Below, piece after piece: positions 2,643 through 60,775 of a DNA stretch of 64,000 nucleotides; the stretch's first letter is position 1, and each line of letters starts with the position of its first letter. A program made the position numbers and the translations under genes. Origin of the DNA: Octopus sinensis (taxonomy: Eukaryota); the NCBI RefSeq assembly GCF_006345805.1, contig NC_042999.1:37448001-37512000 (forward strand), given 5' to 3'. Below the pieces are notes generated by a model. That model searched no databases. It saw only the letters and a list, made by a program, of their open reading frames with translations, and had not been told where the DNA came from.

Positions 2643-3638
2643 ATGAAAGAACATACAAATTTATCTTCAAATTTTACTTTGATAGATAAACCGAATCAGA
2701 TCCTTGAGATTGCTGGAACTTTACATATATATGCGTTGCCCGTCCTAATAGCCTTTGGAATCCCAAGCAATTTGCTGTCTCTGGTTGTTTTCACATGTAG
2801 CACAGCCATGAATAAGCTTCCATCCAGTACATATATGGCAGCACTTGCTCTATCAGATTCAGGCTTTCTTTCAATTCTCTTATGCATCTGGCTGCAACAA
2901 ATGAAAATACAAGAATATGTCACACAGTTGTGGTGTCAAGTAATTGTTTTTGGTGCGTATATATTTGGCTTTTTGTCGGTTTGGTTCACAGTTTTATTTA
3001 CAATAGAACGATACAAAGTAATATGCTATCCCTTGAAAGCAACACAGATTTGTTCTAAACGGAGGGCTCGGTTATCTACTCTTATAATCTGTATAATCGC
3101 CATGTTTCTGTATTTTTCCAGTTTTTGGACGACCATCAATCACCAAGGAGAATGCACATTTCGTGAAGAACTGTTCATATTACTTACAATAATAACTTAC
3201 GTCGATACTATAATTACGTTTTTAATACCATTCTTAGCCATTGTTTTTATGAATATAAGAATAATCTTCGCTGTGCGCGCGTTAAAAAAGCGCATCAATT
3301 GGCTACAGGAATCTCAGCCTCACGAAAAGATCCAAAATTTGTTGTCAAAAACACAAATGAAGCTGACCAAGTCGTTGGTAATCGTTTCAAGCGTTTTCTT
3401 AATGTTAGTCCTTCCCAGCCATTTTACGAGATTTTATTTTCTAATTTTCACCCATTTTTTATCTTCTGATTTAAAATTAACTTTGCAAACTGCTCAGTAC
3501 ATCTTGCAATTTCCTTACTATTTAACATTTGGCATCAACTTCCTTCTTTACACTTGTACAAGTTATATGTTCCGACAAGGTCTTTTGGAAATTTATCGAA
3601 ATATTAAAGAGAAAGTTCGATCGATAAAGTTTAAATGA
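2643..3638 (+). CDS. Class A (rhodopsin-like) GPCR, FMRFamide/TRH-receptor-like orphan peptide receptor, 331 aa, single coding exon
   Basis: Seven hydrophobic segments; N-glycosylation sequons NLS/NFT; TM2 LALSD; ECL1 WC and ECL2 Cys; TM3 ERY followed by ICYPLKA; TM6 LVLP; TM7 INFLLY. Polypyrimidine tract plus AG acceptor at 2486-2487 upstream. Confidence 0.93.
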   Translation: MKEHTNLSSNFTLIDKPNQILEIAGTLHIYALPVLIAFGIPSNLLSLVVFTCSTAMNKLPSSTYMAALALSDSGFLSILLCIWLQQMKIQEYVTQLWCQVIVFGAYIFGFLSVWFTVLFTIERYKVICYPLKATQICSKRRARLSTLIICIIAMFLYFSSFWTTINHQGECTFREELFILLTIITYVDTIITFLIPFLAIVFMNIRIIFAVRALKKRINWLQESQPHEKIQNLLSKTQMKLTKSLVIVSSVFLMLVLPSHFTRFYFLIFTHFLSSDLKLTLQTAQYILQFPYYLTFGINFLLYTCTSYMFRQGLLEIYRNIKEKVRSIKFK

Positions 3639-4187: not shown

Positions 4188-7100
4188 TGGATTAACTGTT
4201 AAAGTGGACGGACGTCTATTTGTTTCTCTCCCAAGTCAGTAGCAAGCTACACAGCTTCAAAACTAACTGACCTTAAATATATATATATATTTGTAACCAC
4301 GTGTTTGCCTACAAACCCGTAAGTACGTTTTCATTTAACTACAAATTGTTATATACACCTGTTTTTCTTTTAATATCCTCAAACAACCAAATAATCAAAA
4401 ACTCACACCCTTAAGAGAGAACATTTATATATATATACACTTCTTTAACTCCCAAGAAAGAATATATATATTTTCAAAAATCAAAAGGAAAACAAACAAA
4501 AGAAAAACAAACATGACTAACTTGCAGGCCTGCAACAGACGAATTGGTCTGATAACGAAATTGATTTTAATAAACACATGGTTCTCTCTTTCCCAAACAG
4601 AAAATCTAAATGTTTTGTGTTTGAATGAGATTGCCGAAAAAACATCACAAGTGGTCAACACACGATCCGTCAAACAGATTCGTAACAAGCTGAAACATAT
4701 CGAAGTATCTTTCAACTGCAAACTGACCAAAAAGCCTTTTGAAAAGCTTCTTCATATTTTCACAGTTCAAGAACAGAAACAGCTAGAAAATCAGCAGCCA
4801 CAACAACAAACACAACAGAATGAGCCACTCCTAGTTCCCAGCACAATGGCTGACCCTAACATCGGTCAAGCACGACAACAACAACAACAGCCACAGCAAC
4901 AAGAAAAACAACACACTCCTCAACTCTAGCTTACTAGACGATTCACTAAATGCCAGTATCTTTTCACCGCTCTCACAGCAACCACCACAATTATCATCAT
5001 CATCATCACCACCGCTGCCACCATCGTCTTCTATCACCAAAAATACCAACAGAAACCAAATAAGAAACCATTGCCCTCTTCCCCCACATCACCACCTCAA
5101 TACTACTGCAGTAACAAAAACTTAAGAAACATAGGAAGCAGAATGCGCCCCCACGGCACAAACAAGAAATCCCCAAATATGCCGCTATTCACTGCGCCAG
5201 AGACTCTGCACAAATAGTGACTGCATCTTCACGCATCTACCGGCACTAGACGCACTACCGGCCAAGGCCAAAGCACGCATCCCACAATAACATCAACACC
5301 ACCAAATAGTAAATCGAATTCAAAACACACACACTCGGAGTCCCAAAATCTGCCGGTATTCCCAACGTGAGAGAACATGTCTACTGAGTGACTGTCCCTT
5401 CACTCATCTTCCAGGGACCCGACGCACAAACAGAAACGGGGCTTCAAGCCAACACACAAACCTGAATAAAAATAAAAATAGAAACACACCATGCTGCAGT
5501 AATGCTGGTCCAGTCTTTTCAGGAAGACACAAAAACAACAACAACAAAAGTGGAAACTACAACCCTATCCAACAGTGCAACCACACCTCCAGCCAAAAAC
5601 TGCTCCCTAAGCAGGAAAATTCTTTTTTAGCCATGTTGAACATGGCAAAAGAGATACACAAAAACATTCTAGCCATCACTCAACACCATCCTATGCTATT
5701 ACCCCAGTGCACCAATTCCCCACATTGCTGCCAAACACACACAAAAAATCCAAGCCCCCTGCAACAGTCAAAACCAGCCACTACACTAACCTCCACATTC
5801 CTACTCAATGCACAAGGTGTCAGCCCTTCCATCAATGCACAAAAATGGAAGGTCCAATTCATTGAAGACTGGGTTGGTAACCATTCACACCACATCCCCT
5901 TCTTCATTCTCACTGAGACCCACCTTGACAACTCCCACTTGGAGGCCGAACCGAAGTGAGAGTGAAGAATTTCACAACCATCCGCGCGGATCGTATCGGC
6001 AGGAGGAAGGGTGGAACTGCCATTTTCCTGCATGATTCATTTACGGCAGATGGAAATAGTATATTCTCCAACGGCTACTGTGAATCAGTCACCGTGCACA
6101 ACAAAGCCAATGACCTGACAGTAATTGGGCTCTATAGGCCGCCCCAAACACCCATACTGTGCTTTAAAGAATGCCTCAACAGCATTAAGTGCTTTATTCA
6201 ACAGTGCCATTCTAGCAACATACTCATGATGGGAGACTTCAATCTACCCTGTGTTGACTGGACTACAAACTGTTTGAAACCAAGCACTCCCGCCTCAACC
6301 GCTGACAAAGAAGCAGCAGAGTCACTTTTCGACTTTACGAATGAGTTTTTCTTGTCCCAACTTGTCCTTGCACCAACAAGACATCAGAACATTTTGGACC
6401 TAGTGTTTAGTAACCACACTAACACTATACATAACGTTACAGTGGAAAAAACCCTTCTTTCAGACCATGACATGGTTCTCTGTAACATGAAATTCCACCA
6501 GCCGAAAGCTAATCCTAGTGACCTTCCTCCAGCCCACCCATTTGACAACATGGATCTCCATAATGCCAACTGGGATGCAATCAGGAACGAGCTATCACAT
6601 GTTGACTGGTCCTTTACACATACACACATCTCCACCAACCATAAAACATCTTGGCAGATCTTTGTAGACACCGTCACAGACATATGTGCAAAACACTCCC
6701 CACCAAGACCTGTGAACAAAAGTGCAGAATCCCCAAAACAGAAAAACCATTATCAGAAAAATAAAAAGAACAAACAAAAAATTAACAAACTAAAGTACTG
6801 CCAACAGCAACACACACATTCGACGGCTATCGCACTGCTTGAATCTAAAAAATATAACCTCCAACAATGCATGAAGACCCTCATCAATAACAAAGATCAG
6901 CTGAGGAGAAGTGGGCCATTGAAAAAATCAAACTCAACCCCAAAGTGTTCTTTTCATTTGCGAGAGGAAACGCAGGGTCACTGTCTCCACTGTAGGCCCT
7001 CTAATTGACGAAACTGGCACTCTCCAAGATAATGCCAAATCCATGGCCGAGATACTGCAGAAACAATACTGCTCTGTTTTCAGCAATCCTGATATGGCCG

Positions 7101-8815
7101 ATCTGGGCTGTATCAGTGATGTCAACCCCCAACACACTATATCGGACATAACGTTTAGTGCCCCTGATGTCTTAGCGGCGATAAACGAAATAAAACACAA
7201 TTCAGCAGTAGGCCCCGATAGGTTCCCTGCTTGTGTCCTGAAGGTGTGTCGACACCAACTTGCATCTCCCCTTGCTAATCTGTGGAGAAACTCACTGGAT
7301 GCTGGCTATATTCCAAAAAACCTTCTGTCCCAGTCTGTTGTCCCAGTTTTCAAAAAGGGAAACAAGTCCCTTGCAGTGAATTACCGTCCGATCTCACTCA
7401 CCTCTCATATCATCAAGGTATTTGAGAGGGTGGTGAGATCTCGAATAACCCAATTTCTGGAAAGCAACAGACGGCTGATCTCCAACCAACATGGGTTCCG
7501 TAATGGAAGGGACTGCCTAACGCAGCTCCTGCATCACTTTGAGGACATTTTGAGAGCTTTGGGAGAGGGCTCCAACACCGATGTCATCTACCTTGATTTC
7601 AGTAAGGCCTTCGACAGGGTCGATCACAAGATCCTATTGAAAAAACTATCCAACATTGGTGTCTCTGGAAAGTTACTGAAATGGATCAAGTGTTCCTGAC
7701 AGACAGATCTCAACATGTTGTAGTTGAAGGGGTAAAATCAAGCCCAGCCAAAGTCAGTAGTGGCGTTCCGCAAGGCACTGTGCTGGGCCCACTTCTTTTC
7801 ATCATTTACATTAATGATATTAATGACATCATCAAGCACAGCAACATAAAAATCTTTGCAGATGACTCCAAGCAACAGAAGGTCATAAATGAGGCGAGTG
7901 ACCGGACATGCCTTCAGTCAGATCTACTGGCTGTTATCCAATGGCAGAAAAAAACAATATGCTGCTGAACGAGGATAAATTTGAGCTAATCCACTTTGGA
8001 AAGAGGATGCCCTGAAACTCCCATACTCCCTTCCTTCAGGTGAAACTCTCGCGGCGTCCAACAACATCAGAGACTTGGGAGTAATTGTGGACAACAACAT
8101 AAGCTGGGCCACTCATATAAACACCAAAGTTGACATGGCCCGCAGAATGTGTTCCTGGATTCTCAGAACTTTCCAGTCGAGAGATATCCACACCATTATC
8201 CTTCTCTTCTCCACTTTTGCCCGACCCCACCTTGAATACTGTTGTCCACTGTGGTCTCCCCACACAATACAAGGTATCATAAAAGTTGAAGCACCTCAAA
8301 GGGCAATCACAAAAAAGATAGATGGCATGACAGGCCTCGACTATTGGGGTCGACTAAAAGCTAAAACTCTATTCTCTCCAACGTCGTCGTGAGCGCTACA
8401 TCATCTGCATGATGTGGAAAATATTCCATCAGCATTGCCCAAATGATGTTGGCATCACCTTCAAGGTACATCCCAGGCTTGGGCCCCGTGCCATCCGCCC
8501 AAAACAAAAATCGCACTCTCATCTCATAACAACAATACGGCACAATTATTTCTCCTCAATTGGCCCCGCTCTCTTTAACATTACACCCAAACACATTAAA
8601 ACAGAAACTGACCCTATAGGGTTCAAGAAGTCTTTGGACAGATTCCTTCAAGAAATCCCGGATAACCCCCTACACCCGGATATGTCTCTGTAAACAATAA
8701 CTCTCTACTTGAGTGGGCCATAGTGCCCAAATTCTGACTTGAAAGACTTCACCAGGTGGTGCTATTAAGTTAGACATGGCCTGGGCCAATAATGGCCGAA
8801 ACCTATCAAAGTATA
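4188..8815 (+). mobile_element. Near full-length CR1/L2-group non-LTR retrotransposon (ORF1 remnant plus frameshifted APE-RT ORF2)
   Basis: APE motifs GLYRPP, MGDFNLP, PTRHQNILDLVF, SDH (5956-7008). RT motifs NYRPISLTS, QHGFR, YLDFSKAFDRVDH, SGVPQGTVLGPLLF, FADDSK (7043-7968). C-terminal RPHLEYCCPLWSP (8075-8392). Flanked by TA-rich repeats. The 5' boundary is approximate. Confidence 0.92.
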
Positions 8816-21542: not shown

Positions 21543-21964
21543 TTTTACTCTTTACTCTCTTTTACTTGTTTCAGTCATTTGACTGCGGCTATGCTGGAGC
21601 ACAGCCTTTAATCGAGCAACTCGAAACCCGGGACTTATTCTTTGTAAGCCTAGTACTTATTCTATCGGTCTCTTTTGCCGAACCGCTAAGTGACGGAGAC
21701 ATAAACACACCAGCATCGGTTGTCAAGCGATGTTGGATGGGACAAACACAGACACACAAACACACACACACACACACATATATATATTTATATATATATA
21801 CGACGGGCTTCTTTCAGTTTCCGTCTACTAAATCCACTCACAAGGCTTTGGTCGGCCCGAGGCTATAGTAGAAGACACTTGCCCAAGGTGCCACGCAGTG
21901 GGATTGAACCCGGAACCATGTGGTTGGTAAACAAGCTACTTACCACACAGCCGCTCCTGCGCCT
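21543..21964 (-). mobile_element. SINE family B (tRNA head plus ACCTTGGGCAAGT CORE-like domain, internal microsatellite)
   Basis: Head ggcgcaggagtggctgtgtggtaag...ggttcagtccc; more than 10 copies in the window. Confidence 0.88.
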
Positions 21965-23653: not shown

Positions 23654-24218
23654 CTAATTTATACTTATATTTATATTTACTTGTATTATATTCTCTTTTT
23701 TATATATATTCTACTTATTATACAACATTACTCTTTTATGTACACTTTTTTATGTATATTCCTTTATGTACACTGATTTGCTCTGCTTTTTATATTTAAC
23801 CCTACAGTCTCTTATGTGGTGGTTTAATAAAGTATGTGATTAAGTACTATCTGGTAATTGATATTTGATTTAGATGTATTTCTCCATTTTCTTATCTTGT
23901 ATTAGTAATTTGTGGTAGATCATTTTACCTTTGCCCATATAATACAGTAAACGAATTGATTGCATCGCAATCATTAACATTTATGTATTAACTTTGTTGG
24001 GTACTTCACTAGCAGTATATTGGATATACGTTATCCCATAGAGGGTTGCATTTACAAATCTCAATTTGTAACTATAGTTAACTTTCTGAGGAATATGAAT
24101 TGCTAATGCTTGTATACTTGAAGCATCCACTCATTACTCTAAGTACTGACAGAGTATGTGAATACACCCAAGTATAGTACATTTATTCCTGTTATTATAT
24201 ATATTATATTATATATTA

Positions 24219-25064
24219 CTAGCAGAATTGCCCGGCGTTGCTCGGGGCTGAATTGCTTGAAAGTACTGTTAATGATTGCACTGAATTATGATGATTATTC
24301 AGGCAAATATTGATATAAGCTTACGGTGGGAAATAAGAACTTAACGATCAAACGTGTGCTATTGCATTGTTTGGGGGGGAACCAAATTTCTGATGAGCAT
24401 TATAGGGGCACCAACTTTAAGTTTGAGAAAGTGTGGTGGGTAGTCCGGGGGCTCAAAGGAATTGAGTACCTCTATTGGATAGTTGATGACGTCCTCTGGG
24501 TCAGGAGTTGTATCGATAGACTGATATACATAGACTTCCCCAGGAATGAGTTTTAGCATTTCATCATTAATATGGTGAACAGTTTTATTCCTCGGGGCCA
24601 GTATAGCCTTTTTGCCAATCCAATCCATATTCTGATAATTAGCTTGTAGATCTGGGAACACTGCATCTCTGAGATCAGAAGGCGTCTTAACAATGGGTAC
24701 AAATGGAATCGATGGCAATATTACCATTTTCATCCCCTGGTATTTTGCCTTCGCCATGTGCAAGGAGGGTGTGAGGAAATGCTGCTGATGTGATATTACG
24801 TCGCATATGAGCACGCATATTGGTGTGAAGTTTGAGAGTTACTTCCGTTTATTAAAAAAATATGCATTAAAATGGAAAAAAATGATGGTAAATTATTTGT
24901 AAAATCATAGACTCATCGTAGACGCGCGCTAATACCTAGAAGGGCTCGATATGAATCACGACTATAAGATACCCGGTTTTGGTTAAACTGCATCGCAAAA
25001 TGTGGGAGTAGTTAGGAATCTAAATCGGAGTAGACAGACACACAACCTCTTTTATATATAAATA
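24219..25064 (-). mobile_element. Internally deleted Helitron retaining a helicase fragment
   Basis: 3' hairpin cccgagcaacgccggg plus CTAG at 24219-24222; ORF 24359-24814 has AILAPRN, YPIEVLNS, LKLKVGAPIMLIRNL; 5' end shared with 36340-36737. Confidence 0.88.
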
Positions 25065-25065
25065 T

Positions 25066-25542
25066 TTTCGTCCTAAAAAACTTTGTATGGATTGAATGGT
25101 TACCTCTATGGAAATATATACACGCACATTATACATACATGTGTGTATAGATGAATATATAAATACATTTAAATATCTATATACACTTTTGGGCGATCTT
25201 TCTGTTTCTTAGAGATAACTTTAGATCTTATTCGTGCTAAAAAACTTTGTATGGGAGTGAATGGTTACCTCTATGGAAATATATACACACACGTTATACA
25301 TACATGTGTGCATAGATGAATATATAAATACATTTATATATCTATATACACTTTTGGGCGATCTCTGTGCTACTTAGAGATAACTTTAGATCTTATTTTC
25401 GTCCTAAAAAACTTTGTGCAGAGTGAATGGTTACGTGTATGGAAATATATACACACACATTATACATACATCTGTGTATAGATGAATATATAAATACATT
25501 TAAATATCTATATACACTTTTGGGCGATCTTTCTGCTACTTG
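25066..25542. repeat. Tandem repeat, about 165-bp unit x3 (probably Helitron-internal minisatellite)
   Basis: Units begin ttcgtcctaaaaaactttgt near 25066, 25230 and 25397. Confidence 0.8.
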
Positions 25543-25550
25543 GATATAGG

Positions 25551-25989
25551 GGCGATGTTTCGCTTGTCGTAGCACACGTTTCCGTCGATTTCCGTAAAAA
25601 ATGTAAACACTGAATCGGCCATACATACATACACACACACATACATACACACACACACACACATACATGCATACATACATATACACATAAACCGAGTAAA
25701 AAATTTCAGTTATCTCTCTCTTCACACATTACTCTCTCTGTCTCTTCACACACACTAACAGAAGCACTTCACTTACACAAAACATACTGTCTGTCTCCCA
25801 CACTCCATCAAACACACACACAACACATGTACATCAATGCGTCCCATGCACGGTAACTTCAAAAGAACTTCCCTCGTCATACAATCGCTTTCTCTTAGTC
25901 TCTTTCGCTCTCATTACTTATGTAAAAAAATAAAAAGTTTTTTACGGAAATCGACGGAAAACCTGTGCTACGACAAGCGAAACATCGCC
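25551..25989. mobile_element. MITE with 51-bp TIRs and 8-bp TSD (Merlin-like)
   Basis: TIR GGCGATGTTTCGCTTGTCGTAGCAC...; TSD GATATAGG at 25543-25550 and 25990-25997; GGNRM terminus. Confidence 0.8.
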
Positions 25990-26529
25990 GATATAGGTCT
26001 TATATTCGTCCTCCTAAAATACTTCCTGTAACACACTCACGCACACGCACGCACACACACACACACAACACAGCACCCTCACACACACACACACGCACAC
26101 ACACACTCACACACACGCAACGTTAGCTTACAATTTTATTTATATATTTGCGTGTCTATGTGTGTAAAGAGGAAGTGGCAGAGTGAAAGAGTCACTCACT
26201 ACAAAAGGTGAATTACTTTCATTTTATTCGTTGCACACTGTGTGTGTGGTGTGCGTGTGTGTGGTGGTGTAAAACACATTAAGAAAAGCATTTGACATAC
26301 ACACCAGAATGTGAGTTTTCTGTAAATTTTGCTTAATTGGAGTTTAAATTTTAAAAAGTGGACCTGGCAAAACCCGATGCATTCTACTCTTAAAAATGCT
26401 AAGTAAATTGTAATTGAAGAAATCCTATATTGTAGATTTCTATAACTGACAAAGGGAGGCAGATAAAATCTGCCTTTTATAATAAGAGATATATTATATA
26501 TATTATATAATATATAATTCTCTTTTATT

Positions 26530-26915
26530 TCTCTTTTACTTGTTTCAGTCATTTGACTGCGGCCATGCTGGAGCACCGCCTTTAGTTGAGACTTATTCTT
26601 TGTTAGCCCAGTACTTATTCTATCGGTCACTTTTTGCCGAACCGCTAAGTGACGGGGACGTAAACACACCAGCATCGGTTGTCAAGCAATGCTAGGGGGA
26701 CAAACACAGACACACAAACACACACGCATACAATAATATATATATACATATATACGACAGGCTTCTTTCACTTTCCGTCTATCAAATCCACTCACAAGGA
26801 TTTGGTCGGCCCGGGGCTATAGCAGAAGACACTTGCCCAAGGTGCCACGCAGTGGGACTGAACCCGTAAACATTTGGCTGGTTAGCAAGCTACTTACCAC
26901 ACAGCCACTCCTGCG

Positions 26916-26918
<3 letters not shown>
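26530..26918 (-). mobile_element. SINE family B
   Basis: Full-length copy matching the family. Confidence 0.88.
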
Positions 26919-26954
<36 letters not shown>

Positions 26955-29018
26955 TATATAATATATATATATATATATTGTATAGAGGGCATTATTACAC
27001 ATAAATGCCTCACCTAGGAGGGACAAAGTCATTACTACCAAATTATACTAATCATACCCAATGCAGTTTTTCAAAGCAAGACATTTAAAAAAATGAATTT
27101 ATGTCTGTATCACCGTGATTTCACATTCAACTTTACGTCTAATGATCGTCAGCAGAACTGATTCTGAATACATCATAATAAACTACCAACCTTACGTAGC
27201 GAAGACAAACAGACAACTGCTCACTCCGGCCAAGCACATGGAATGTTTATAAATCATATATCCGGTAAATGGCGGGCTTTTTTCGAACTGCATGTCGGGT
27301 AATGAAAAGTATTTCGGATAAGTTTAGCAATTAAGGATAATCTCTTAATAAGGGATCTTAACAAGAAATTATCGGGTAGCTAGCGTGAAAACCTCATAAA
27401 AGAAAAGAATTCGAAAATAATTTTTTTCTTTTGAACAAATTAATTATATCTATATTGTATAGAGGGCATTATTACACATAAATGCCTCACACTAGGAGGG
27501 ACAAAGTCATTACTACCAAAATTATAACTAATCATACCCAAATGCAGTTTTTCAAAGCAAGACATTTAAAAAATGAATTTAGTTCTGTATCACCGTGATT
27601 TCACATTCAACTTACGTCTAATGATCGTCAGCAGAACTGATTCTGAATACATCATAAATAAACTACCAACCTTACGTAGCGAAGACAAACAGACAACTGC
27701 TCACTCCGGCCAAGCACATGGAATGTTTATAAATCATATATCCGGTAAATGGCGGGCTTCTTACGAACTGCATGTCGGGTAATGAAAAGTATTTCGGAAT
27801 AAGTTTAACAATTAAGGATAATCTCTTAATAAGGGATCTTAACAAGAAATTATCGGGTAGCTAGCGTGAAAAAACCTCATAAAAGAAAAGATTCGAAAAT
27901 AATTTTTTTCTTTTGAACAAATAATTATATCTATATTGTATAGAGGGCATTATTACACATAAATGCCTCACACTAGGAGGGACAAAGTCATTACTACCAA
28001 AATTATACTAATCATACCCAAATGCATTTTTTCAAAGCAAGACATTTAAAAAAATGAATTTAGTTCTGTATCACCGTGATTTCACATTCAACTTTACGTC
28101 TAATGATCGTCAGCAGAACTGATTCTGAATACATCATAAATAAACTACCAACCTTACGTAGCGAAGACAAACAGACACACTGCTCACTCCGGCCAAGCAC
28201 ATGGAATGTTTATAAATCATATATCCGTAAATGGCGGGCTTTTTTACGAACTGCATGTCGGGTAATGAAAAGTATTTCGGAATAAGTTTAACAATTAAGG
28301 ATAATCTCTTAATAAGGGATCTTAACAAGAAATTATCGGGTAGCTAGCGTGAAAACCTCATAAAAGAAAAGAATTCGAAAATAATTTTTTTCTTTTGAAC
28401 AAATTAATCTATCTATATTGTATAGAGGGCATTATTACACATAAATGCCTCACACTAGGAGGGACAAAGTCATTACTACCAAAATTATACTAATCATACC
28501 CAAAAGCAGTTTTTCAAAGCAAGACATTTAAAAAAATGAATTTAGTTCGTATCACACGTGATTTCACATTCAACTTTACGTCTAATGATCGTCAGCAGAA
28601 CTGATTCTGCTTTGAAAAATGTCTTGCTTTGAAAAACTGCATTTGGGTATGATTAGTATAATTTTGAGTAATGACTTTGTCCCTCCTAGTGTGAGGCATT
28701 TATGTGTAATAATGCCCTCTATACAATATAGATATAATTAATTTGTTCAAAAGAAAAAAATTATTTTCGAATTCTTTTCTTTTATGAGGTTTTCACGCTA
28801 GCTACCCGATAATTTCTTGTTAAGATCCCTTATTAAGAGATTATCCTTAATTGTTAACTTATTCCGAAATACTTTTCATTACCCGACATGCAGTTCGTAA
28901 AAAAGCCCGCCATTTACCGGATATATGATTTATAAACATTCCATGTGCTTGGCCGGAGTGAGCAGTTGTCTGTTTGTCTTCGCTACGTAAGGTTGGTAGT
29001 TTATTTATGATGTATTCA

Positions 29019-29088
29019 GAATCAGTTCTGCTGACGATCATTAGACGTAAAGTTGAATGTGAAATCACGGTGATACAGAACTAAATTC
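29019..29088 (+). ncRNA. Type I hammerhead ribozyme (satellite monomer, representative copy)
   Basis: agttctg-CTGACGA-t-cattagac-gtaaa-gttgaatg-t-GAAA-TCAC-G-GTGA-TA-cagaact: 7-bp stem I, 5-bp stem III with 1-nt loop, predicted AUA cleavage after 29075. Confidence 0.75.
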
Positions 29089-29501
29089 ATTTTTTTAAAT
29101 GTCTTGCTTTGAAAAACTGCATTTGGGTATGATTAGTATAATTTTGGTAGTAATGACTTTGTCCCTCCTAGTGTGAGGCATTTATGTGTAATAATGCCCT
29201 CTATACAATATAGATATAATTAATTTGTTCAAAAGAAAAAAATTATTTTCGAATTCTTTTCTTTTATGAGGTTTTCACGCTAGCTACCCGATAATTTCTT
29301 GTTAAGATCCCTTATTAAGAGATTATCCTTAATTGTTAAACTTATTCCGAAATACTTTTCATTACCCGACATGCAGTTCGTAAAAAAGCCCGCCATTTAC
29401 CGGATATATGATTTATAAACATTCCATGTGCTTGGCCGGAGTGAGCAGTTGTCTGTTTGTCTTCGCTACGTAAGGTTGGTAGTTTATTTATGATGTATTC
29501 A

Positions 29502-29571
29502 GAATCAGTTCTGCTGACGATCATTAGACGTAAAGTTGAATGTGAAATCACGGTGATACAGAACTAAATTC
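29502..29571 (+). ncRNA. Type I hammerhead ribozyme (second plus-strand satellite copy)
   Basis: Identical to 29019-29088; core CTGACGA at 29514-29520. Confidence 0.75.
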
Positions 29572-29889
29572 ATTTTTTTAAATGTCTTGCTTTGAAAAAC
29601 TGCATTTGGGTATGATTAGTATAATTTTGGTAGTAATGACTTTGTCCCTCCTAGTGTGAGGCATTTATGTGTAATAATGCCCTCTATACAATATAGATAT
29701 AATTAATTTGTTCAAAAGAAAAAAATTATTTTCGAATTCTTTTCTTTTATGAGTTTTCACGCTAGCTACCCGATAATTTCTTGTTAAGATCCCTTATTAA
29801 GAGATTATCCTTAATTGTTAAACTTATATATATATATATATATAAGTTTAACAATTAAGGATAATCTCTTAATAAGGGATCTTAACAAG

Positions 29890-29926
<37 letters not shown>

Positions 29927-29930
<4 letters not shown>

Positions 29931-30110
29931 GGAGAATTCACAAAAAACAAAAGACGAAGACACGTGGTGTAGACAACAAACAAATGTATAGTATAACGCT
30001 CGGGAAGTGAAGAAGTCTTTAACGTTTCGAGCCTACGCTCTTCCACAGAAAGGAACACAGAAAGAAACAAGGAGAGAAGATAAAGAATGTGTAATGGCTA
30101 GCGATCTATC
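29927..30110 (-). mobile_element. PLE pseudo-LTR-type remnant with minimal hammerhead-like motif (30017-30052)
   Basis: Minus strand cttt-CTGTGGA-A-GAGC-gtag-GCTC-GAAAC-GTT-aaag; flanked by (TA)n. Confidence 0.6.
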
Positions 30111-30197
30111 ATATATATATATATAAACAGCGCGACACCTATGATTCAAAAGTTCAGGCCTGATACCTATATTACAAAGAATTATTTTAATCCGATC

Positions 30198-30420
30198 TTA
30201 AGGCGGCGAGTTGGCAGAATCTTTAGCTTATAGGATAAAATGCTTGGTAGCATCTTCTCCCAGTTCTTTAAGCTCTAAGTTCAAATTCTGCCAAGGACAG
30301 CTTTGCCTTTCATCTTTTCGAGATCGATAAAATAAGTATTAATTGAGGAGTTGGGCCGATGTAATCGACTAACCTCCGCTCGTAAAAATTTCTGGCCTTG
30401 TACCAAAATCTGAAACCATA
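30198..30420 (+). mobile_element. SINE family D (diverged)
   Basis: taaggcggcgagttggcagaat...gcctttcatcttttcgagatcgat. Confidence 0.75.
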
Positions 30421-32336
30421 TCAATCTGAGCTTACCAAGTAAAGGCAACAGCTTCAGGCATATTTCGGATTTATAAGACATGATAATGCAAAACTCCGCT
30501 TTGTACACACCAAAATAAGTTATAAGAGAACCAATATATAAAAGTATTAGTAATTTTTTCCTGAATACAGTAAGTATGGTGACACAGACTTAAATTATTT
30601 TTGCTGCGGATGGAATCCCTGGGTAAGTCGCTACATCTGCTGACTTCTTTCATTTTTTTCTTTTCACTGTAACTTGCAGCTTGCTACAAAACACAAGACG
30701 TTCAACAGAGTTGAGTCGCAGAATTAATATACAAATTAATGAAAAAATAAGTATTATTTTTTTAGTTGCTATTTTTACAGTAACCCTTAGTTAACTCAGA
30801 TCTAACAGACCTATGGATCAAAGATATTCTAAGAGCAATCATCCCAACCTTACCTAACCCAGTGTATCCCACCACACCTGTTTTGAGGATAGGACGGTGT
30901 GATTTAGGGAAATTTGGCTGCCTTTTCTAGAGGGTCAATTATACGAAATTCTTGGCCCTCGAGTCAATTCGTAATTTCTGCCGATAATAAATGTTCGTTA
31001 CAAATCCTGTTTTTAGAAATAGTAATTTCAAAGTAATGTCCCTTGAATTTCTTTTAAAGTTGCTTCCCTTGATCTAAACTAATTTTGTAGTCGGTAAAAT
31101 TACTCTCAGAAACAAAATGATATTTATGGTACTTCTGATTTTAGAAATATTATTAGATAATTAATCAATTAATGTTTTTTTCTTCCCTATTTTTTTTTCT
31201 GTCTTCAGCAGTGATTTCTCAAAATATGTTTGAAAGATTGACATTTCTCTTTCTCTAAAGGGAAAATTTGCAATTTATTTTTCGATGGTGAGAAATATAA
31301 CCCAATTTACAAAAAAGTAAACAGCTGGAAAATAGTTTTAAATAAAGAGTAAAAAAAACCCAGAAATCTGCAAATGAACAAAATAAGAACGTGCACACTC
31401 ATACATTGCGCCAGAGGGCACTGGTATTCTCCAGTTAAAAGAGCAAAACACTTAATGACATTACTACAGCAATTGCAAGCCTGAGGCATTGGATTAGCAA
31501 GACACCTTCCCAAGTATCATCTGATACTTCAATGAAATGGGATTCTACCGAAGTCAAAAACCTTTCTTGTCATCAGTACTCTCCAACATCCCAAAAACCG
31601 TAGGGAGAAAAAGTAATTACTGGAATTTCAGTGACTTATTTTATTTGGCTACTGACGCAGTAAGCCTCACCTCCAAACGCAGTTTCGAAGAGTTGTGATG
31701 GAGAAGAAAAGAAAAAAAGGTACAGAGAAGAAAGAAAGTCGCAAGTGCTGAAATTTCCTACAAAGCATCTCTATTTAGTTCAGATGCGAAGAGTGAGTCC
31801 ATTGGGTTTCTTCTTGTTGTATTCGGATAATTACACTGGTTCCAGAATTGAAGGAATCTTTACCCTAGCCATGGCTCATTTAATGATAAAAGTGATCATG
31901 TTGTAACAACTAAAGTGCATTTCATTAAAATGACAATCTGTAAAAAAATTCCAGAATTGAAAGATTTACTATAATGGACACATCATTTCCTTACATCACC
32001 TCCAACTCTGAAATCGGTGGAAATGAGGAACCTATCTGGGCTAAATAAACCACTGCTGGCTGCCACAGGTGAAGCTTCAGTCTAATCTATAGAAAATTTG
32101 GCATTCACAGAAAATTGGCAACATCCTAAGTATTGATTAGATTGATCAAAAAAGACAGTCGAAAATTTTCTTGACTATCATGTTTTTCAGATATATTGAT
32201 TTCTAACCTAGACAGAAGGCTGTATGTTTTAATGGGATAAAACAAAATCAATTACATTGATATACTGGCAATTATATAAAAAGAGATGTTTTTAGGAAAC
32301 CCAAGCTATCTATTTAGTGAAGATGGTACAGATGTT

Positions 32337-37079: not shown

Positions 37080-37469
37080 AGTAGGAGTGGCTGTGTGGTA
37101 AGTAGCTTGCTTACCAACCACATGGTTCCGGGTTCAGTCCCACTGCGTGGCATCTTGGGCAAGTGTCTTCTGCTATAGCCTCAGGCTGACAAATGCCTTG
37201 TGAGTGGATTTGGTAGACGGAAACTGAAAGAAGCCTGTCGTATATATATATATGTGTATATGTTTGTGTGTCTGTGTTTGTCCCCCTAGCATTACTTGAC
37301 AACCGATGCTGGTGTGTTTACGTCCCCGTCACTTAGCGGTTTGGCAGCAAAAGAGACCGATAGAATAAGTACTAGGCTTACAAAGAATAAGTCCCGGGGT
37401 CGATTTGCTCGACTAAAGGTGGTGTTCCAGCATGGCCGCAGTCAAATGACTGAAACAAGTAAAAGAAAG
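37080..37469 (+). mobile_element. SINE family B
   Basis: Full copy. Confidence 0.88.
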
Positions 37470-37626
37470 ATATAATTTTTTTCATTTTTAAATGTTTTCC
37501 CCTTTATATTTTTTTCTCCATATATCCTTTCATATCTTCATTCGTATTTTACACGTAACATTCACCTGAATTTTTGTCATTCGTATTAGCTTACATTCAT
37601 CTCTTAATCATCCTCTTCATTTGGAT

Positions 37627-38024
37627 ACTCTTTTACTTGTTTCAGTCATTTGACTGCGGCCATGCTGGAGCACTGCCTTTTAGTCAAGCAAATCGATCCC
37701 AGGTCTTATTCTTTGTAAGCCTTTTACTTATTCTATCGGTCACTTTTTGCCGAACCGCTAAGTTACGGTGACGTAAACACACCAGCATCGGTTGTCAAGT
37801 GACATTGGGGGGACAAACACACACACACACACACATACGCATATATATATACACATATACGACAGGCTTCTTTTCAGTTTCCATCTACTAAATCCACTCA
37901 CAAGGCTTTGGTCGACCTGAGGCTATAGTAGAAGACGTTTGCCCAAGGTACCACACAGTGGGACTGAACTCGAAATCATGTGGTTGGTAAGCAAGCTACT
38001 TATCACACAGCCACTCCTGTGCCT
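37627..38024 (-). mobile_element. SINE family B
   Basis: Full copy, tail-to-tail with the previous one. Confidence 0.85.
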
Positions 38025-44903: not shown

Positions 44904-45536
44904 CTCTTTCGTTATTGTATTTATTTTGAGATGCTCTGAGTTTCTTTCAATTACTTTATATACAACAAAGAATTTAATACAATAACTTAGTTATCATTAA
45001 GCTAGTGTTAGGAACATAAATTGTGACCGAGGTTTGATGGAAGATTTTAATTCAAAACTTATGAAAACAAGACATTTGTAGCCAGAGCCAGAGCGCAGGA
45101 GTGGCTGTGTGGTAAGTAGCTTGTTTACCAACCACATGGTTCTGGTTTCAGTCCCACTGCGTGGCACCTTGGGCAAGTGTCTTCTACTATAGCCTCAGGC
45201 CGACCAAAGCCTTGTGAGTGGATTTGGTAGACGGAAACTGAAAGAAGCCCGTCGTATATATGTATATATATATATGCGTGTGTGTGTGTTTGTGTGTCCG
45301 TGTTTGTCCCCCTAGCATTGCTTGACAACCGATGCTTGTGTGTTTATGTCCCCATTACTTAGCGGTTCGGCAAAAAAGACCAATAGAATAAGCACTGGGC
45401 TTCCAAAAGAATAAGTCCCGGGGTCGAGTTGCTCGATTAAAGGCAGTGCTCCAGTATGGCTGCAGTCAAATGACTGAAACAGGTAAAAAGAGAGTAAAAG
45501 AGAGAGCCGGTTTCAGCCGGATTGGTAACGAAAGGG
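44904..45536. mobile_element. piggyBac-like MITE (TTAA flanks) with SINE B inserted (45092-45505)
   Basis: ttaa|ctctttcgtta...taacgaaaggg|ttaa; uninterrupted sibling at 47417-47638. Confidence 0.75.
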
Positions 45537-50880: not shown

Positions 50881-51235
50881 TTCGAGCTTTGGTGTTGGAG
50901 AAGACTTTTGCGGATTCCATGGACAGCGAGGCTCACCAATGGAGAAGTTCTTAAGCAGATAAGGCCGAAAATGTCGCTAGAAGCTGGGATCACCAAGCGT
51001 AGATTGGCATATTTCGGTCATATTATGCGGAGAGAATCCCTGGAGAAGGACATTATGCTCGGAATGGTCAGTGGCAAGAGAGGCCGACCAAGAACCCGCT
51101 GTCTTGACACCATCAGGAGTGATACCGGAATGGACATGGCCAGTCTGAAGGAAGCGGCCCAGGATAGAACTGACTGGAGGACACTGATCTAAAGAGTGAC
51201 CAAGAGTCGACTTCGACTGAGCGGTTAGAGAGAGA
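50881..51235 (+). mobile_element. RTE-BovB-like LINE 3' fragment
   Basis: FELWCWRRLLRIPWTARLTN...LAYFGHIMRRESLEKDIMLG; (GA)n tail. Confidence 0.82.
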
Positions 51236-51576: not shown

Positions 51577-51992
51577 AACAGCAGTGGTGTAATTCTCATA
51601 TGGGACTGTCATGTTATGTTGACAGTATACAACCAATCTATCGCTCCACCACTGCTCATGTCTCTTTGAGACATTTAGAAATTTAATATTTCTATTACGG
51701 TGACCAGTGAATAGATTTCACTGTAAATATATGTTTGTGAAGGCTAGACAGGCACCTCAGTCAGCAGATCTCACTATCCTGGGCTGATGACGGGTTAAGA
51801 CCCAGAAACATGCATGTCCTCAGGTGTGAATCTTGGCTGGTGGGGTTGCTTGCCTCCCTTTCACAAATATAAGGACACAGGATATGTGTCAAAGCCGACA
51901 GGAAGCATCGATGCTTCCTAGGGCTAAACAGCGGTGGTGTAATTCCCATACGGGACTGTCACGTTAAGTTGACAGTATACAACCACAATAAA
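51577..51992 (+). mobile_element. 350-bp terminally redundant element carrying a hammerhead (candidate retrozyme monomer)
   Basis: 59-bp direct repeats at 51577-51635 and 51927-51985 (5 mismatches), HHR between them, AATAAA immediately after. Confidence 0.7.
51766..51833 (+). ncRNA. Type I hammerhead ribozyme, GUC cleavage site
   Basis: cctggg-CTGATGA-c-GGGT-taag-ACCC-a-GAAAC-ATGCAT-GTC-ctcagg; stem I extends via an internal loop (tcac/gtga, agat/atct). Confidence 0.82.
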
Positions 51993-54172: not shown

Positions 54173-54567
54173 AGGCGCAGGAGTGGCTGTGTGGCAAGTA
54201 GCTTGCTAACCAACCACATGGTTCCGGGTTCAGTCCCACGGCGTGGCATCTTGGGCAAGTGTCTTCTACTATAGCCCCGGGCCGACCAATGCCTTGTGAG
54301 TGGATTTGGTAGACGGAAACTGAAAGAAGCCTGTTGTATATATGTATATATATATGTGTGTTTGTGTGTCTGTGTTTGTCCCCCTAGCATTGCTTGACAA
54401 CCGATGCTGGTGTGTTTACGTCCCCGTCACTTAGCGGTTTGGCAAAAGAGACCGATAGAATAAGTACTGGGCTTACAAAGAATAAGTCCCGGGGTCGATT
54501 TGCGCGACTAAAGGCGGTGCTCCAGCATGGCCGCAGTCAAATGACTGAAACAAGTAAAAGAGTAAGA
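54173..54567 (+). mobile_element. SINE family B
   Basis: Full copy. Confidence 0.88.
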
Positions 54568-54743
54568 GTATATATATATATGTATGTATTTATATGTATA
54601 TATATATATATACATATATAACACACATATATATATATATATTAATATATATATATATATACATATATAATACATACATACACACACACACACATATCTA
54701 TATATATATATATACATATATATATACATACATACACACACAC

Positions 54744-60370: not shown

Positions 60371-60775
60371 TAGGCATAGGAGTGGCTGTGTAGTAAGTAG
60401 CTTGCTAACCAACCACATGGTTCCGGGTTCAGTCCCACTGCGCGGAATCTTGGGCAAGTGTCTTCTGCTATAGCCTCGGGCCGACCAAAGCCTTGTGAGT
60501 GGATTTGGTAGACGGAAACTGAAAGAAGCCTGTCGTATATATGTGTGTGTGTTTGTGTGTCTGTGTTTGTCCCCCTAGCATTGCTTGACAACCGATGCTG
60601 GTGTGTTTACGTCCCCGTCACTTAGCGGTTCGGCAAAAGAGACCGATAGAATAAGTACTGGGCTTACAAAAGAATAAGTCCCGGGGTCGAGTTGCTCGAT
60701 TAAAGGCGGTGCTCCAGCATGGCCGCAGTCAAATGACTGAAACAAGTAAAAAGAGTAAAAAAAAAAAAGAGAGTA
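60371..60775 (+). mobile_element. SINE family B
   Basis: Full copy. Confidence 0.88.

What the first reader, a model, noticed from the sequence alone, without database searches (positions are those of the whole stretch)
26972..29826. 483-bp tandem satellite with a type I hammerhead in every unit: candidate cephalopod non-LTR retrozyme
Seen: about 6 tandem copies of a 483-bp AT-rich unit between (TA)n tracts. Each unit covering the site contains agttctg-CTGACGA-[stem II]-GAAA-TCAC-G-GTGA-TA-cagaact (minus-strand copies near 27095, 27575, 28056, 28538; plus-strand 29019, 29502). Stem I is 7 bp plus an internal loop and 4 more bp; stem III is 5 bp closed by a single nucleotide. Known: tandem HHR satellites (newt satellite 2, schistosome Sm-alpha, cave-cricket pDo500, coral and mussel retrozymes) are transcribed as multimers and self-cleave to monomers; several circularise and are thought to be mobilised by Penelope-like RT. 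A 1-nt-loop stem III is the hallmark of double-hammerhead folding between adjacent copies. Inference: this is a retrozyme family releasing 483-nt monomer RNA or circRNA by AUA cleavage. I do not recall such a family described from cephalopods but cannot verify that.
Basis: partly seen in the sequence, partly recalled or inferred. Interest (0 to 1): 0.93.

Follow-up and report, generated by a model that had tools for sequence, protein, structure and literature searches.

The report
Hammerhead-ribozyme tandem repeat in octopus DNA
A 483-bp repeat in the Octopus sinensis genome carries a hammerhead self-cleaving RNA motif in every unit and looks like a "retrozyme", a known kind of small parasitic element in animals that I found no report of in cephalopods; its layout at this site points to copying-in by a Penelope-like retrotransposon.

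Summary
About 5.9 units of a 483-bp, 33% GC repeat lie at 26968-29896 inside a (TA)n microsatellite. Each of the six unit junctions carries a type I hammerhead-like motif: three are identical and three carry 1-2 small changes.

A hammerhead descriptor finds this quality of match in about 0.0005 shuffled windows. The cause is a long helix II with a U.U mismatch at its base and an 11-nt helix III. Axolotl retrozymes have the same U.U mismatch and still cleave.

Three results support an RNA element of the hammerhead polarity:
- The circular 483-nt RNA is 67% paired (z -5.4, against -3.0 for the antisense strand).
- Two hammerhead domains co-fold into a double hammerhead.
- The array is two head-to-head blocks whose 3' ends abut (TA)n, plus a 55-bp inverted tail. 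This matches insertion by Penelope-like elements.

A second, unrelated hammerhead element lies at 51577-51985.

Cleavage, expression, circles, other genomic copies and covariation could not be tested here. Verdict: a probable non-LTR retrozyme, a new member of a known kind, of moderate interest.

The parts
26918..26977 (.). Left part of the (TA)n microsatellite target. It starts directly at the 3' end of a ~430-bp SINE-like repeat (26489-26917).
   Evidence: Other copies of the SINE-like repeat end in CCTAT, some followed by TA-rich tails.
26968..28609 (-). Left block of the array, 3.4 units with the hammerhead sense on the minus strand. Its 3' end (unit position ~138-143) merges into (TA)n. 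Its 5' end (unit position 425) is at the central junction.
28610..28616 (.). A 7-nt filler (CTTTGAA) at the head-to-head junction. With the following AAA it repeats CTTTGAAAAA found 13 nt further on. The junction is not symmetrical (unit position 425 against 22).
28617..29827 (+). Right block of the array, 2.5 units with the hammerhead sense on the plus strand. Its 5' end is at unit position 22 and its 3' end at unit position 270, abutting (TA)n.
29019..29088 (+). Type I hammerhead-like domain (reference copy). Stem I is 7+4 bp; core CUGACGA / GAAA; helix II is U.U + 4 bp + A.G + 3 bp + GUAAA; helix III is AUCAC-G-GUGAU. Predicted cleavage is after A29075 (triplet AUA).
29502..29571 (+). Identical hammerhead-like domain. 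Predicted cleavage is after 29558.
28056..28125 (-). Identical hammerhead-like domain on the minus strand. Predicted cleavage is between 28069 and 28068.
27575..27643 (-). Hammerhead-like domain with a 1-nt deletion in loop 2.
27095..27164 (-). Hammerhead-like domain with the stem I 3' strand changed to CAGACAT (stem I reduced to 4 bp).
28538..28607 (-). Hammerhead-like domain with an extra U in the helix III loop and a 1-nt deletion in the stem I 3' strand. The descriptor misses it.
29825..29844 (.). Short (TA)10 tract. Two unit-position-270 ends face each other across it.
29842..29896 (-). A 55-bp inverted fragment (unit 216-270), the 'tail'. With the end of the plus block it forms a perfect hairpin, which draws spurious microRNA hits.
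29894..29927 (.). Right part of the (TA)n target, (TA)17.

Best explanation
This is a young insertion of a non-coding, hammerhead-bearing retroelement. It is a non-LTR retrozyme, that is, a non-autonomous passenger of Penelope-like elements (PLEs), in Octopus sinensis.

Proposed mechanism, with each step marked as shown or inferred:
1. The array is transcribed as a multimer of the hammerhead polarity. This is inferred.
2. Hammerhead domains of neighbouring units pair through the nearly palindromic AUCAC-G-GUGAU to form a double hammerhead. They cut after the A of AUA, releasing 483-nt monomers. The fold is computed; cleavage is inferred.
3. Stem I (7+4 bp) holds the two ends together, and a host RNA ligase closes a circle that is 67% paired. 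Pairing is computed; the circle is inferred from coral, mussel and axolotl retrozymes.
4. A PLE reverse transcriptase/GIY-YIG nuclease nicks both strands of a (TA)n tract. It primes at internal sites of a circular or multimeric template (unit positions ~140 and 270, the latter used twice).
5. It then copies more than one unit in each direction. The two cDNAs meet 5' end to 5' end and are joined with a 7-nt filler. Steps 4 and 5 are inferred from the architecture of the locus.
For: **Motif**
- All invariant core residues and three helices are present at six sites.
- Chance expectation is 0.0005 per window at helices 6/4/5 and 0 of 4000 shuffles at 7/4/5.
- A second, independent hammerhead with the same odd base of helix II lies in the same window.

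**RNA structure**
- The hammerhead fold lies within 1.2-1.6 kcal/mol of the MFE.
- Two domains co-fold at -34.5 kcal/mol against 2 x -11.4, with an intermolecular helix III.
- The linear monomer folds at -125.7 kcal/mol, z -6.0; the antisense at -95.9, z -3.7.
- As a circle the sense strand gives -120.2, z -5.4, 67% paired, 18 G.U pairs. The antisense gives -92.1, z -3.0, 55% paired, 7 G.U pairs.

**No coding capacity**
- The longest ORF is 69 aa and has no homologue.
- GC is 33%.

**Precedent for the U.U mismatch**
- Axolotl HHR_Amex2 has a U.U mismatch at the base of helix II. It cleaves 22% in one hour as a monomer and much better as a dimer (PMC7229834).

**Architecture**
- Head-to-tail multimers, a head-to-head inverted 5'-truncated block, a short tail at one end, and a (TA)n target.
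- These are the hallmarks listed for PLE insertions, with (TA)n the preferred target of Naiads (PMC8557442).
- A purified PLE protein cleaves and extends both strands of AT-rich DNA and starts reverse transcription at internal sites (PMC11167929).

**PLEs in the host**
- Octopus spp. carry Naiads. O. vulgaris carries Penelope families.
- Retrozyme consensus lengths of 51-972 bp, with 7 or fewer units in 75% of families, bracket this array.
Against: - Rfam Hammerhead_1 scores only 14.4 bits against a cut-off of 34, and helices II and III are not aligned. There is no hit at all in the larger searches.
- 10.1/11.1 is U.U, not the G-C that is highly conserved even in PLE hammerheads (PMC4209133).
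- The loop 1-loop 2 contacts of canonical type I hammerheads are not recognisable.
- Only one array was seen and no other genomic copy could be retrieved, so 'mobile family' and covariation are untested.
- No PLE reading frame lies in the window. The two RTs present are LINE type.
- There are no expression data.
- Three of the six motifs carry small defects.
- The copies differ mainly by homopolymer indels typical of a PacBio assembly. Copy number and the inversion could therefore be partly mis-assembled.
Confidence: 0.68

Rival explanations
1. This is an ordinary satellite or minisatellite that expanded by unequal exchange or replication slippage at a (TA)n tract. The hammerhead-like motif is a chance or long-dead resemblance with no catalytic role.
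For: - Rfam is sub-threshold.
- There is a U.U mismatch at 10.1/11.1.
- Only a single array was seen.
- There are no covariation or expression data.
- (TA)n tracts are prone to fold-back rearrangements, which could make the palindrome at 29792-29877.
Against: - Chance expectation is at most 0.0005 per window.
- A second independent motif with the same architecture lies in the same window.
- The strand-specific excess of RNA structure, with 18 against 7 G.U pairs, is not expected of plain DNA satellites.
- Stem I closes the whole monomer fold.
- The central junction (unit position 425 against 22) is not at a TA tract and is not symmetrical, so fold-back does not explain it.
Confidence: 0.14
2. 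This is not a separate non-autonomous family. It is a string of pseudo-LTRs or 5'-truncated ends of an autonomous octopus Penelope-like element whose reading frame is simply absent at this locus.
For: - The long helix II, the unpaired nucleotide after A9 and the palindromic helix III resemble PLE min-hammerheads (PMC4209133).
- The insertion hallmarks are those of PLEs.
- Retrozymes and pLTRs are sister sequences in Xenopus.
Against: - There are six consecutive units of constant length with no trace of an RT/EN frame.
- Stem I is longer (7+4 bp) than the 4-5 bp of PLE min-hammerheads.
- The whole 483-nt unit folds as one closed, highly paired molecule.
Confidence: 0.13
3. The tandem repeat is real, but the inverted arrangement and copy number are artefacts of a PacBio-based assembly, such as a chimeric or palindromic read.
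For: - GCA_006345805.1 is a PacBio plus Hi-C assembly.
- The left block carries 1-2% single-base indels, mostly in homopolymers, while the right block is nearly clean.
- PLE-type insertions are known to trouble assemblies.
Against: - A missed-adapter palindrome would be symmetrical about its centre. Here the arms break at unit positions 425 and 22 with a 7-nt filler.
- The two arms have different lengths and different outer ends (unit positions 143 and 270).
Confidence: 0.05

Closest known systems
Metazoan non-LTR retrozymes: coral Acropora, mussel Mytilus, axolotl Rtz_331/Rtz_353 (PMC7229834)
   Same: - Head-to-tail repeats of a few hundred bp, low GC and no coding capacity.
- One type I hammerhead per unit, with a weak palindromic helix III suited to dimeric cleavage.
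- A highly self-paired monomer RNA.
- The U.U mismatch at the base of helix II is shared with axolotl HHR_Amex2.
   Different: - The unit is longer (483 nt, against 170-400 nt in that paper, though within the 51-972 bp of the 2026 preprint).
- Helix II is long (9 stacked positions) and helix III is 5 bp around one G.
- No recognisable loop 1-loop 2 contacts.
- The host is a cephalopod.
- Expression and cleavage are not shown.
Newt satellite 2, Schistosoma Sm-alpha and cave-cricket pDo500 hammerhead satellites (from established knowledge and the introductions of PMC4209133 and PMC7229834)
   Same: Tandem satellite units transcribed as multimers and cut to monomers by a type I hammerhead. In newts this works as a double hammerhead.
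   Different: Those motifs reach the Rfam Hammerhead_1 score and have G10.1-C11.1, a 4-bp helix II and a helix III of 1-2 bp with a small loop. This one does not.
Min-hammerheads in the pseudo-LTRs of Penelope-like elements (PMC4209133)
   Same: Larger than usual helix II, an unpaired nucleotide right after A9, a palindromic helix III region, and a predicted need to act as dimers.
   Different: - PLE motifs keep G10.1-C11.1 and have a short helix I (4-5 bp).
- They flank an RT-EN reading frame. Here there is no frame, helix I is 7+4 bp, and an extra U also precedes G12.
Insertion architecture of PLEs and their non-autonomous derivatives, e.g. Naiad, and Chlamys/MRC1 (PMC8557442; PMC11167929)
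   Same: Multicopy head-to-tail insertions, an inverted 5'-truncated copy joined head to head, a short tail at one end, a (TA)n or AT-rich target with no discernible target-site duplication, and internal starts of reverse transcription on both strands.
   Different: - The tail here is 55 bp and inverted, against 30-40 bp.
- Naiads, the (TA)n-targeting PLEs known in Octopus, lack hammerheads.
- The autonomous partner is not identified.

Membership tests
Non-LTR retrozyme (PMC7229834) | Head-to-tail repeats of a few hundred bp, in multiple copies | tested here: met
   483-bp unit, 5.9 unit equivalents. This lies within the 51-972 bp range, and 75% of families have 7 or fewer units.
Non-LTR retrozyme (PMC7229834) | A type I hammerhead in each unit: CUGANGA, GAAA, A15.1-U16.1, H17, an open helix I and closed helices II and III | tested here: met
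   Descriptor hits with helices of 7, 4 and 5 bp. Present at six sites, three intact and three with small defects. Chance is at most 0.0005 per window.
Non-LTR retrozyme (PMC7229834) | Weak, palindromic helix III that allows a dimeric (double) hammerhead | tested here: met
   AUCAC-G-GUGAU. The co-fold MFE of -34.5 kcal/mol against 2 x -11.4 shows an intermolecular helix III.
Non-LTR retrozyme (PMC7229834) | Conserved G10.1-C11.1 pair | tested here: not met
   U.U at the base of helix II in all copies. Axolotl HHR_Amex2 is a documented active exception.
Non-LTR retrozyme (PMC7229834) | Loop 1-loop 2 tertiary contacts of canonical type I motifs | tested here: inconclusive
   There is an internal loop (C / AA) in stem I and a GUAAA loop on a long helix II. 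No conserved contact pattern is recognisable. Mussel retrozyme hammerheads also lack most of these nucleotides.
Non-LTR retrozyme (PMC7229834) | Low GC (<50%), no LTR, no coding capacity | tested here: met
   33% GC. The longest ORF is 69 aa with no homologue. No tRNA-like sequence. No other Rfam family.
Non-LTR retrozyme (PMC7229834) | Monomer RNA predicted to be stable and highly self-paired | tested here: met
   The circle folds at -120.2 kcal/mol, z -5.4, 67% paired. The antisense gives z -3.0. The linear monomer gives z -6.0 against -3.7.
Non-LTR retrozyme (PMC7229834) | Self-cleavage at the predicted site | not testable with these tools
   Needs in vitro transcription of monomer and dimer.
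Non-LTR retrozyme (PMC7229834) | Expression as linear and circular monomer RNA | not testable with these tools
   No cephalopod RNA-seq is reachable. The ORF-based proxy search found nothing.
Non-LTR retrozyme (PMC7229834) | Dispersed copies at many loci (mobility), with hammerhead helices kept by compensatory changes | not testable with these tools
   No cephalopod genome collection is available. There is one array in 64 kb. The metagenome and viral scans were empty or gave a chance hit. In-array copies are too alike for covariation.
Non-LTR retrozyme (PMC7229834) | Co-occurrence with Penelope-like elements in the same genome | tested here: inconclusive
   No PLE frame lies in the window. The literature reports Naiads in Octopus spp. 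and Penelope families in O. vulgaris.
Rfam Hammerhead_1 (RF00163) | Score at or above the gathering cut-off of 34 bits | tested here: not met
   14.4 bits, E 0.56 on 106 nt, local alignment of stem I and CUGACGA only. Nothing was found.
PLE pseudo-LTR with min-hammerhead (PMC4209133) | The motif sits in direct repeats flanking an RT/GIY-YIG reading frame | tested here: not met
   No reading frame lies within or next to the array. The RTs in the window are LINE type.
PLE-type insertion (PMC8557442, PMC11167929) | Partial or multiple tandems, an inverted 5'-truncated copy head to head, a tail at one end, and a microsatellite or AT-rich target | tested here: met
   Two blocks have their 5' ends at 28609/28617 and their 3' ends in (TA)n. 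There is a 55-bp tail at 29842-29896. No target duplication is discernible.

The most novel reading that the evidence does not exclude
The locus is a preserved product of two-strand, internally primed, more-than-unit reverse transcription of a circular hammerhead RNA at a (TA)n tract. That would make it direct locus-level evidence for which machinery integrates animal retrozymes.

(TA)n is the preferred target of Naiads, the hammerhead-less PLEs known in Octopus. So it may show hammerhead elements parasitising a PLE clade that carries no ribozyme itself. Unit position 270, next to a stable hairpin at about 216-253, would be a defined start site for reverse transcription.
Probability: 0.2. Interest if true: 0.65.

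Novelty: new member of a known kind. Interest (0 to 1): 0.45.

Why it matters
Tandem repeats with type I hammerheads are already known from cnidarians to amphibians, including one mollusc (the mussel). A cephalopod example extends the range rather than the concept.

Two points make it worth a short follow-up:
- **The motif escapes the standard Rfam model.** A second hammerhead in the same 64 kb escapes it too. Cephalopod genomes may therefore hold many hammerheads that routine annotation misses. The recent O. vulgaris repeat annotation mentions neither ribozymes nor retrozymes.
- **The locus hints at the integration machinery.** Reviews state that animal retrozymes show no motif betraying the machinery that moves them. 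This young, nearly undamaged insertion carries the structural signature of PLE integration. That fits the 2026 proposal that retrozymes are PLE derivatives and gives a concrete site at which to test it.

Tried and rejected
1. **Rfam at the gathering score on the whole window:** nothing.
2. **Rfam at E<=10 on 26800-30000:** only microRNA-like hits caused by the perfect hairpin at 29792-29877 and TA-tract noise, and no ribozyme family.
3. **Protein search with the 69-aa ORF of the unit,** as a proxy for finding other copies in public assemblies: no candidate.
4. **Exact-pattern scans:**
   - The hammerhead pattern found 0 hits in metagenome contigs and 0 in viral contigs.
   - A 21-mer of the unit hit one 69% GC bacterial contig (L002). 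BLAST showed only a 22-nt chance match.
5. **Looking for a PLE partner in the window:** the RT frames at 7043-7699 and 57396-58043 are LINE type (APE endonuclease, YADD motif). No GIY-YIG or PLE frame was seen among the ORFs scanned.
6. **Covariation within the array:** copies are 96-100% identical and differ mostly by 1-nt indels, so this is uninformative.
7. **tRNA-like or SINE head in the unit:** none.
8. **Similarity between the 483-bp unit and the second hammerhead element:** none.
9. **Considered and not run:**
   - Fetching PLE proteins of Octopus through the large protein search. Hits cannot be filtered by organism and the cost is high.
   - Comparing orthologous loci in sister species. 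No called gene lies within 10 kb of the array.
Full report
**Source of the window.** An intronless GPCR frame at 2643-3638 (Pfam 7tm_1) is encoded on CM016861.1 of GCA_006345805.1 at 37.45 Mb. A paper in the library names that assembly as Octopus sinensis, built from PacBio and Hi-C data.

**The repeat.** TRF finds two adjacent arrays with periods of 482 and 483 bp. BLAST of one unit (29076-29558) against the window resolves the structure:
- A block of 3.4 units with the motif on the minus strand (26968-28609).
- A 7-nt filler.
- A block of 2.5 units on the plus strand (28617-29827).
- A (TA)10 tract.
- A 55-bp inverted fragment (29842-29896, unit positions 270-216).
- A (TA)17 tract.

On the left the array starts inside a (TA)n tract. 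That tract begins at the 3' end of a ~430-bp SINE-like repeat with at least eight other copies in the window. The unit is 33% GC and occurs nowhere else in the 64 kb. Copies are 96-100% identical and differ mainly by single-base indels, many in homopolymers. This suggests a young array, assembly noise, or both, and it rules out any covariation test within the array.

**The motif.** At all six unit junctions the sequence reads GAAUC-AGUUCUG-CUGACGA-U-CAUU-AGACGUAAAGUUG-AAUG-U-GAAA-UCAC-G-GUGA-UA|CAGAACU-AA-AUUC. In standard numbering:
- C3-A9 is present (CUGACGA), as are G12-A14, A15.1-U16.1 and A17.
- Helix I is open, which makes this a type I hammerhead. It has 7 bp plus 4 more beyond a 1x2 internal loop.
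- Helix III is AUCAC/GUGAU around a single G.
- Helix II is a U.U mismatch, 4 bp, an A.G mismatch, 3 bp and a GUAAA loop.

Three sites are identical and three carry small defects. My descriptor (core boxes plus three helices, allowing one unpaired nucleotide on each side of the base of helix II) finds only these sites and one other locus in the window. Across 4000 dinucleotide-preserving shuffles, matches with helices of at least 6, 4 and 5 bp occur 0.0005 times per window, and matches of 7, 4 and 5 bp never occur (a first run of 300 shuffles is).

**The Rfam test fails.** There is no hit at the gathering score and none at E<=10 on 3.2 kb. On 106 nt alone Hammerhead_1 scores 14.4 bits against a cut-off of 34, aligning only stem I and CUGACGA and skipping helices II and III. 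The motif is therefore not a member of that Rfam family by its own criterion.

The reasons are visible in the sequence: a 23-nt helix II region, an 11-nt helix III, and no G10.1-C11.1 pair. That pair is highly conserved even in PLE hammerheads (PMC4209133). There is a documented exception with measured activity. The roughly 60,000 HHR_Amex2 motifs of axolotl retrozymes have a U.U mismatch at the base of helix II. They cleave 22% in one hour as monomers and much better as dimers (PMC7229834). A long helix II and an unpaired nucleotide after A9 are typical of PLE min-hammerheads.

**RNA-level evidence.**
- The 70-nt domain can adopt the hammerhead fold at -9.8 to -10.2 kcal/mol, against an MFE of -11.4. 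On its own it is not unusually stable (z 0.42).
- Two domains co-fold at -34.5 kcal/mol, against -22.8 for two separate monomers. The MFE contains the intermolecular helix III of a double hammerhead.
- The 483-nt monomer cut at the predicted site folds at -125.7 kcal/mol (z -6.0), with stem I closing the whole molecule. The antisense strand gives -95.9 (z -3.7).
- Folded as circles, the sense strand gives -120.2 (z -5.4, 67% paired, 18 G.U pairs). The antisense gives -92.1 (z -3.0, 55% paired, 7 G.U pairs).
- G.U pairs become C.A on the other strand, so this asymmetry points to structure on the RNA of the hammerhead polarity. Such self-pairing is a listed trait of retrozyme circles.

**Architecture of the insertion.** The two blocks point away from each other.
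- Their 5' ends meet at 28609/28617, at different unit positions (425 and 22). The 7-nt filler, together with the next three bases, repeats a nearby decamer.
- Their 3' ends lie in (TA)n at unit positions ~140 and 270, each with 3-5 nt of TA microhomology.
- The 55-bp inverted fragment also ends at unit position 270, facing the plus block across (TA)10. Position 270 was therefore used twice.

None of the ends coincides with the ribozyme cleavage site at 483|1. That fits priming at internal sites of a circular or multimeric template rather than at the 3' end of a cleaved monomer.

The literature describes exactly this set of features for PLE insertions (PMC8557442):
- Partial or multiple tandems.
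- An inverted 5'-truncated copy joined head to head.
- A short tail at one end.
- Microsatellite targets that hide any target-site duplication, with (TA)n preferred by Naiads.

A purified PLE protein cleaves and extends both strands of AT-rich DNA. It starts reverse transcription at defined internal sites, which generates the tail (PMC11167929). Octopus species carry Naiads, and O. vulgaris carries Penelope families. No PLE frame lies in this window; the two RTs present are LINE type. I infer a PLE-mediated, two-strand, more-than-unit insertion. This is inferred from structure, not shown.

**A second hammerhead.** At 51778-51824(+) the descriptor finds CCUGGG-CUGAUGA-C-GGGU-UAAG-ACCC-A-GAAA-CAUGCAUG-UC|CUCAGG.
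- It has a fully palindromic helix III region, as PLE min-hammerheads do, and again one unpaired nucleotide on each side of the base of helix II.
- Rfam does not report it even on 101 nt.
- It lies between 59-bp direct repeats 350 bp apart (51577-51635 and 51927-51985, 91.5% identical). That is 1.17 copies of a 350-bp unit.
- The unit folds at z -6.8. Its hammerhead domains co-fold into a double hammerhead (-34.9 against 2 x -11.8). It has no similarity to the 483-bp unit.
- Two independent motifs of this quality in one window are far beyond chance. They suggest that octopus genomes hold hammerhead families that Rfam-based annotation misses.

**What is known.** Non-LTR retrozymes were defined in coral, mussel and axolotl and are said to occur in many invertebrate phyla. 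A 2026 preprint finds consensus lengths of 51-972 bp, 7 or fewer units in 75% of families, and a sister relation to PLE pseudo-LTRs. Full-text searches found no paper that links hammerheads or retrozymes to cephalopods. The only exception is the PLE survey, which mentions Naiads in Octopus. The detailed O. vulgaris repeat annotation mentions neither.

**Limits.** No tool here reaches cephalopod genomes or transcriptomes. Other copies, conservation of the helices, transcription, cleavage and circles are therefore all untested. Attempts through protein and pattern searches failed. The inversion and the copy number rest on a single PacBio assembly.

**Verdict.**
- The most likely reading, at about 0.68, is a young non-LTR retrozyme insertion made by a PLE.
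- It is a new member of a known kind and of moderate interest.

Noticed in passing
window 51577-51985 (hammerhead at 51778-51824, + strand): A second, unrelated hammerhead-like motif of the PLE 'min-HHR' style (palindromic CAUGCAUG helix III, G-C at the second position of helix II, one unpaired nucleotide on each side of its base). It sits in 1.17 copies of a 350-bp unit that folds at z -6.8. Rfam does not report it.
   Followed up: partly
window 29792-29877: A perfect hairpin formed by the end of the plus block, (TA)10 and the inverted 55-bp tail. It draws sub-threshold hits to mir-549, mir-3688 and other microRNA models on both strands. These are artefacts of the palindrome, not microRNA genes.
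   Followed up: yes
window 26489-26917, with copies at about 21556-21963, 37083-37475, 37628-38023, 45093-45503, 54174-54607, 60378-60763 and others: A ~430-bp SINE-like interspersed repeat with at least eight copies at 83-87% identity. Copies end in CCTAT, and some are followed by TA- or CA-rich microsatellites. The hammerhead array sits in the (TA)n tail of one copy. ARAGORN finds no tRNA-like head in 24000-32000.
   Followed up: partly
window 2643-3638 (+): An intact intronless 331-aa rhodopsin-family GPCR frame (Pfam 7tm_1, E 7.5e-25). It was used only to identify the source record.
   Followed up: partly
window 5956-7699 (+), 57396-58822 (+), 50908-51192 (+): Fragments of LINE retrotransposons: an APE-type endonuclease plus RT at 5956-7699, an RT with a YADD motif at 57396-58043, and LINE C-terminal tails at 58340-58822 and 50908-51192. 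None is a Penelope-like element.
   Followed up: partly
window 25063-25548: A separate 165-bp tandem repeat (2.9 copies, 90% matches) 1.4 kb upstream of the array. It has no hammerhead descriptor hit, and its relation to the array is unknown.
   Followed up: no
window 26968-28609 compared with 28617-29827: The left block carries 1-2% single-base indels, mostly in homopolymers, while the right block is almost clean. This looks like uneven polishing of a PacBio assembly and cautions against reading the small defects in three hammerhead copies as real mutations.
   Followed up: partly
window 29291-29345 (unit positions 216-270): The segment duplicated as the inverted tail contains a stable hairpin (unit ~216-253 in the MFE fold), followed by UUGUUAAACUUAU and ending at the twice-used end point 270. 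It may be a protein-binding or start site for reverse transcription, by analogy with the stem-loop start site of the anole PLE.
   Followed up: no
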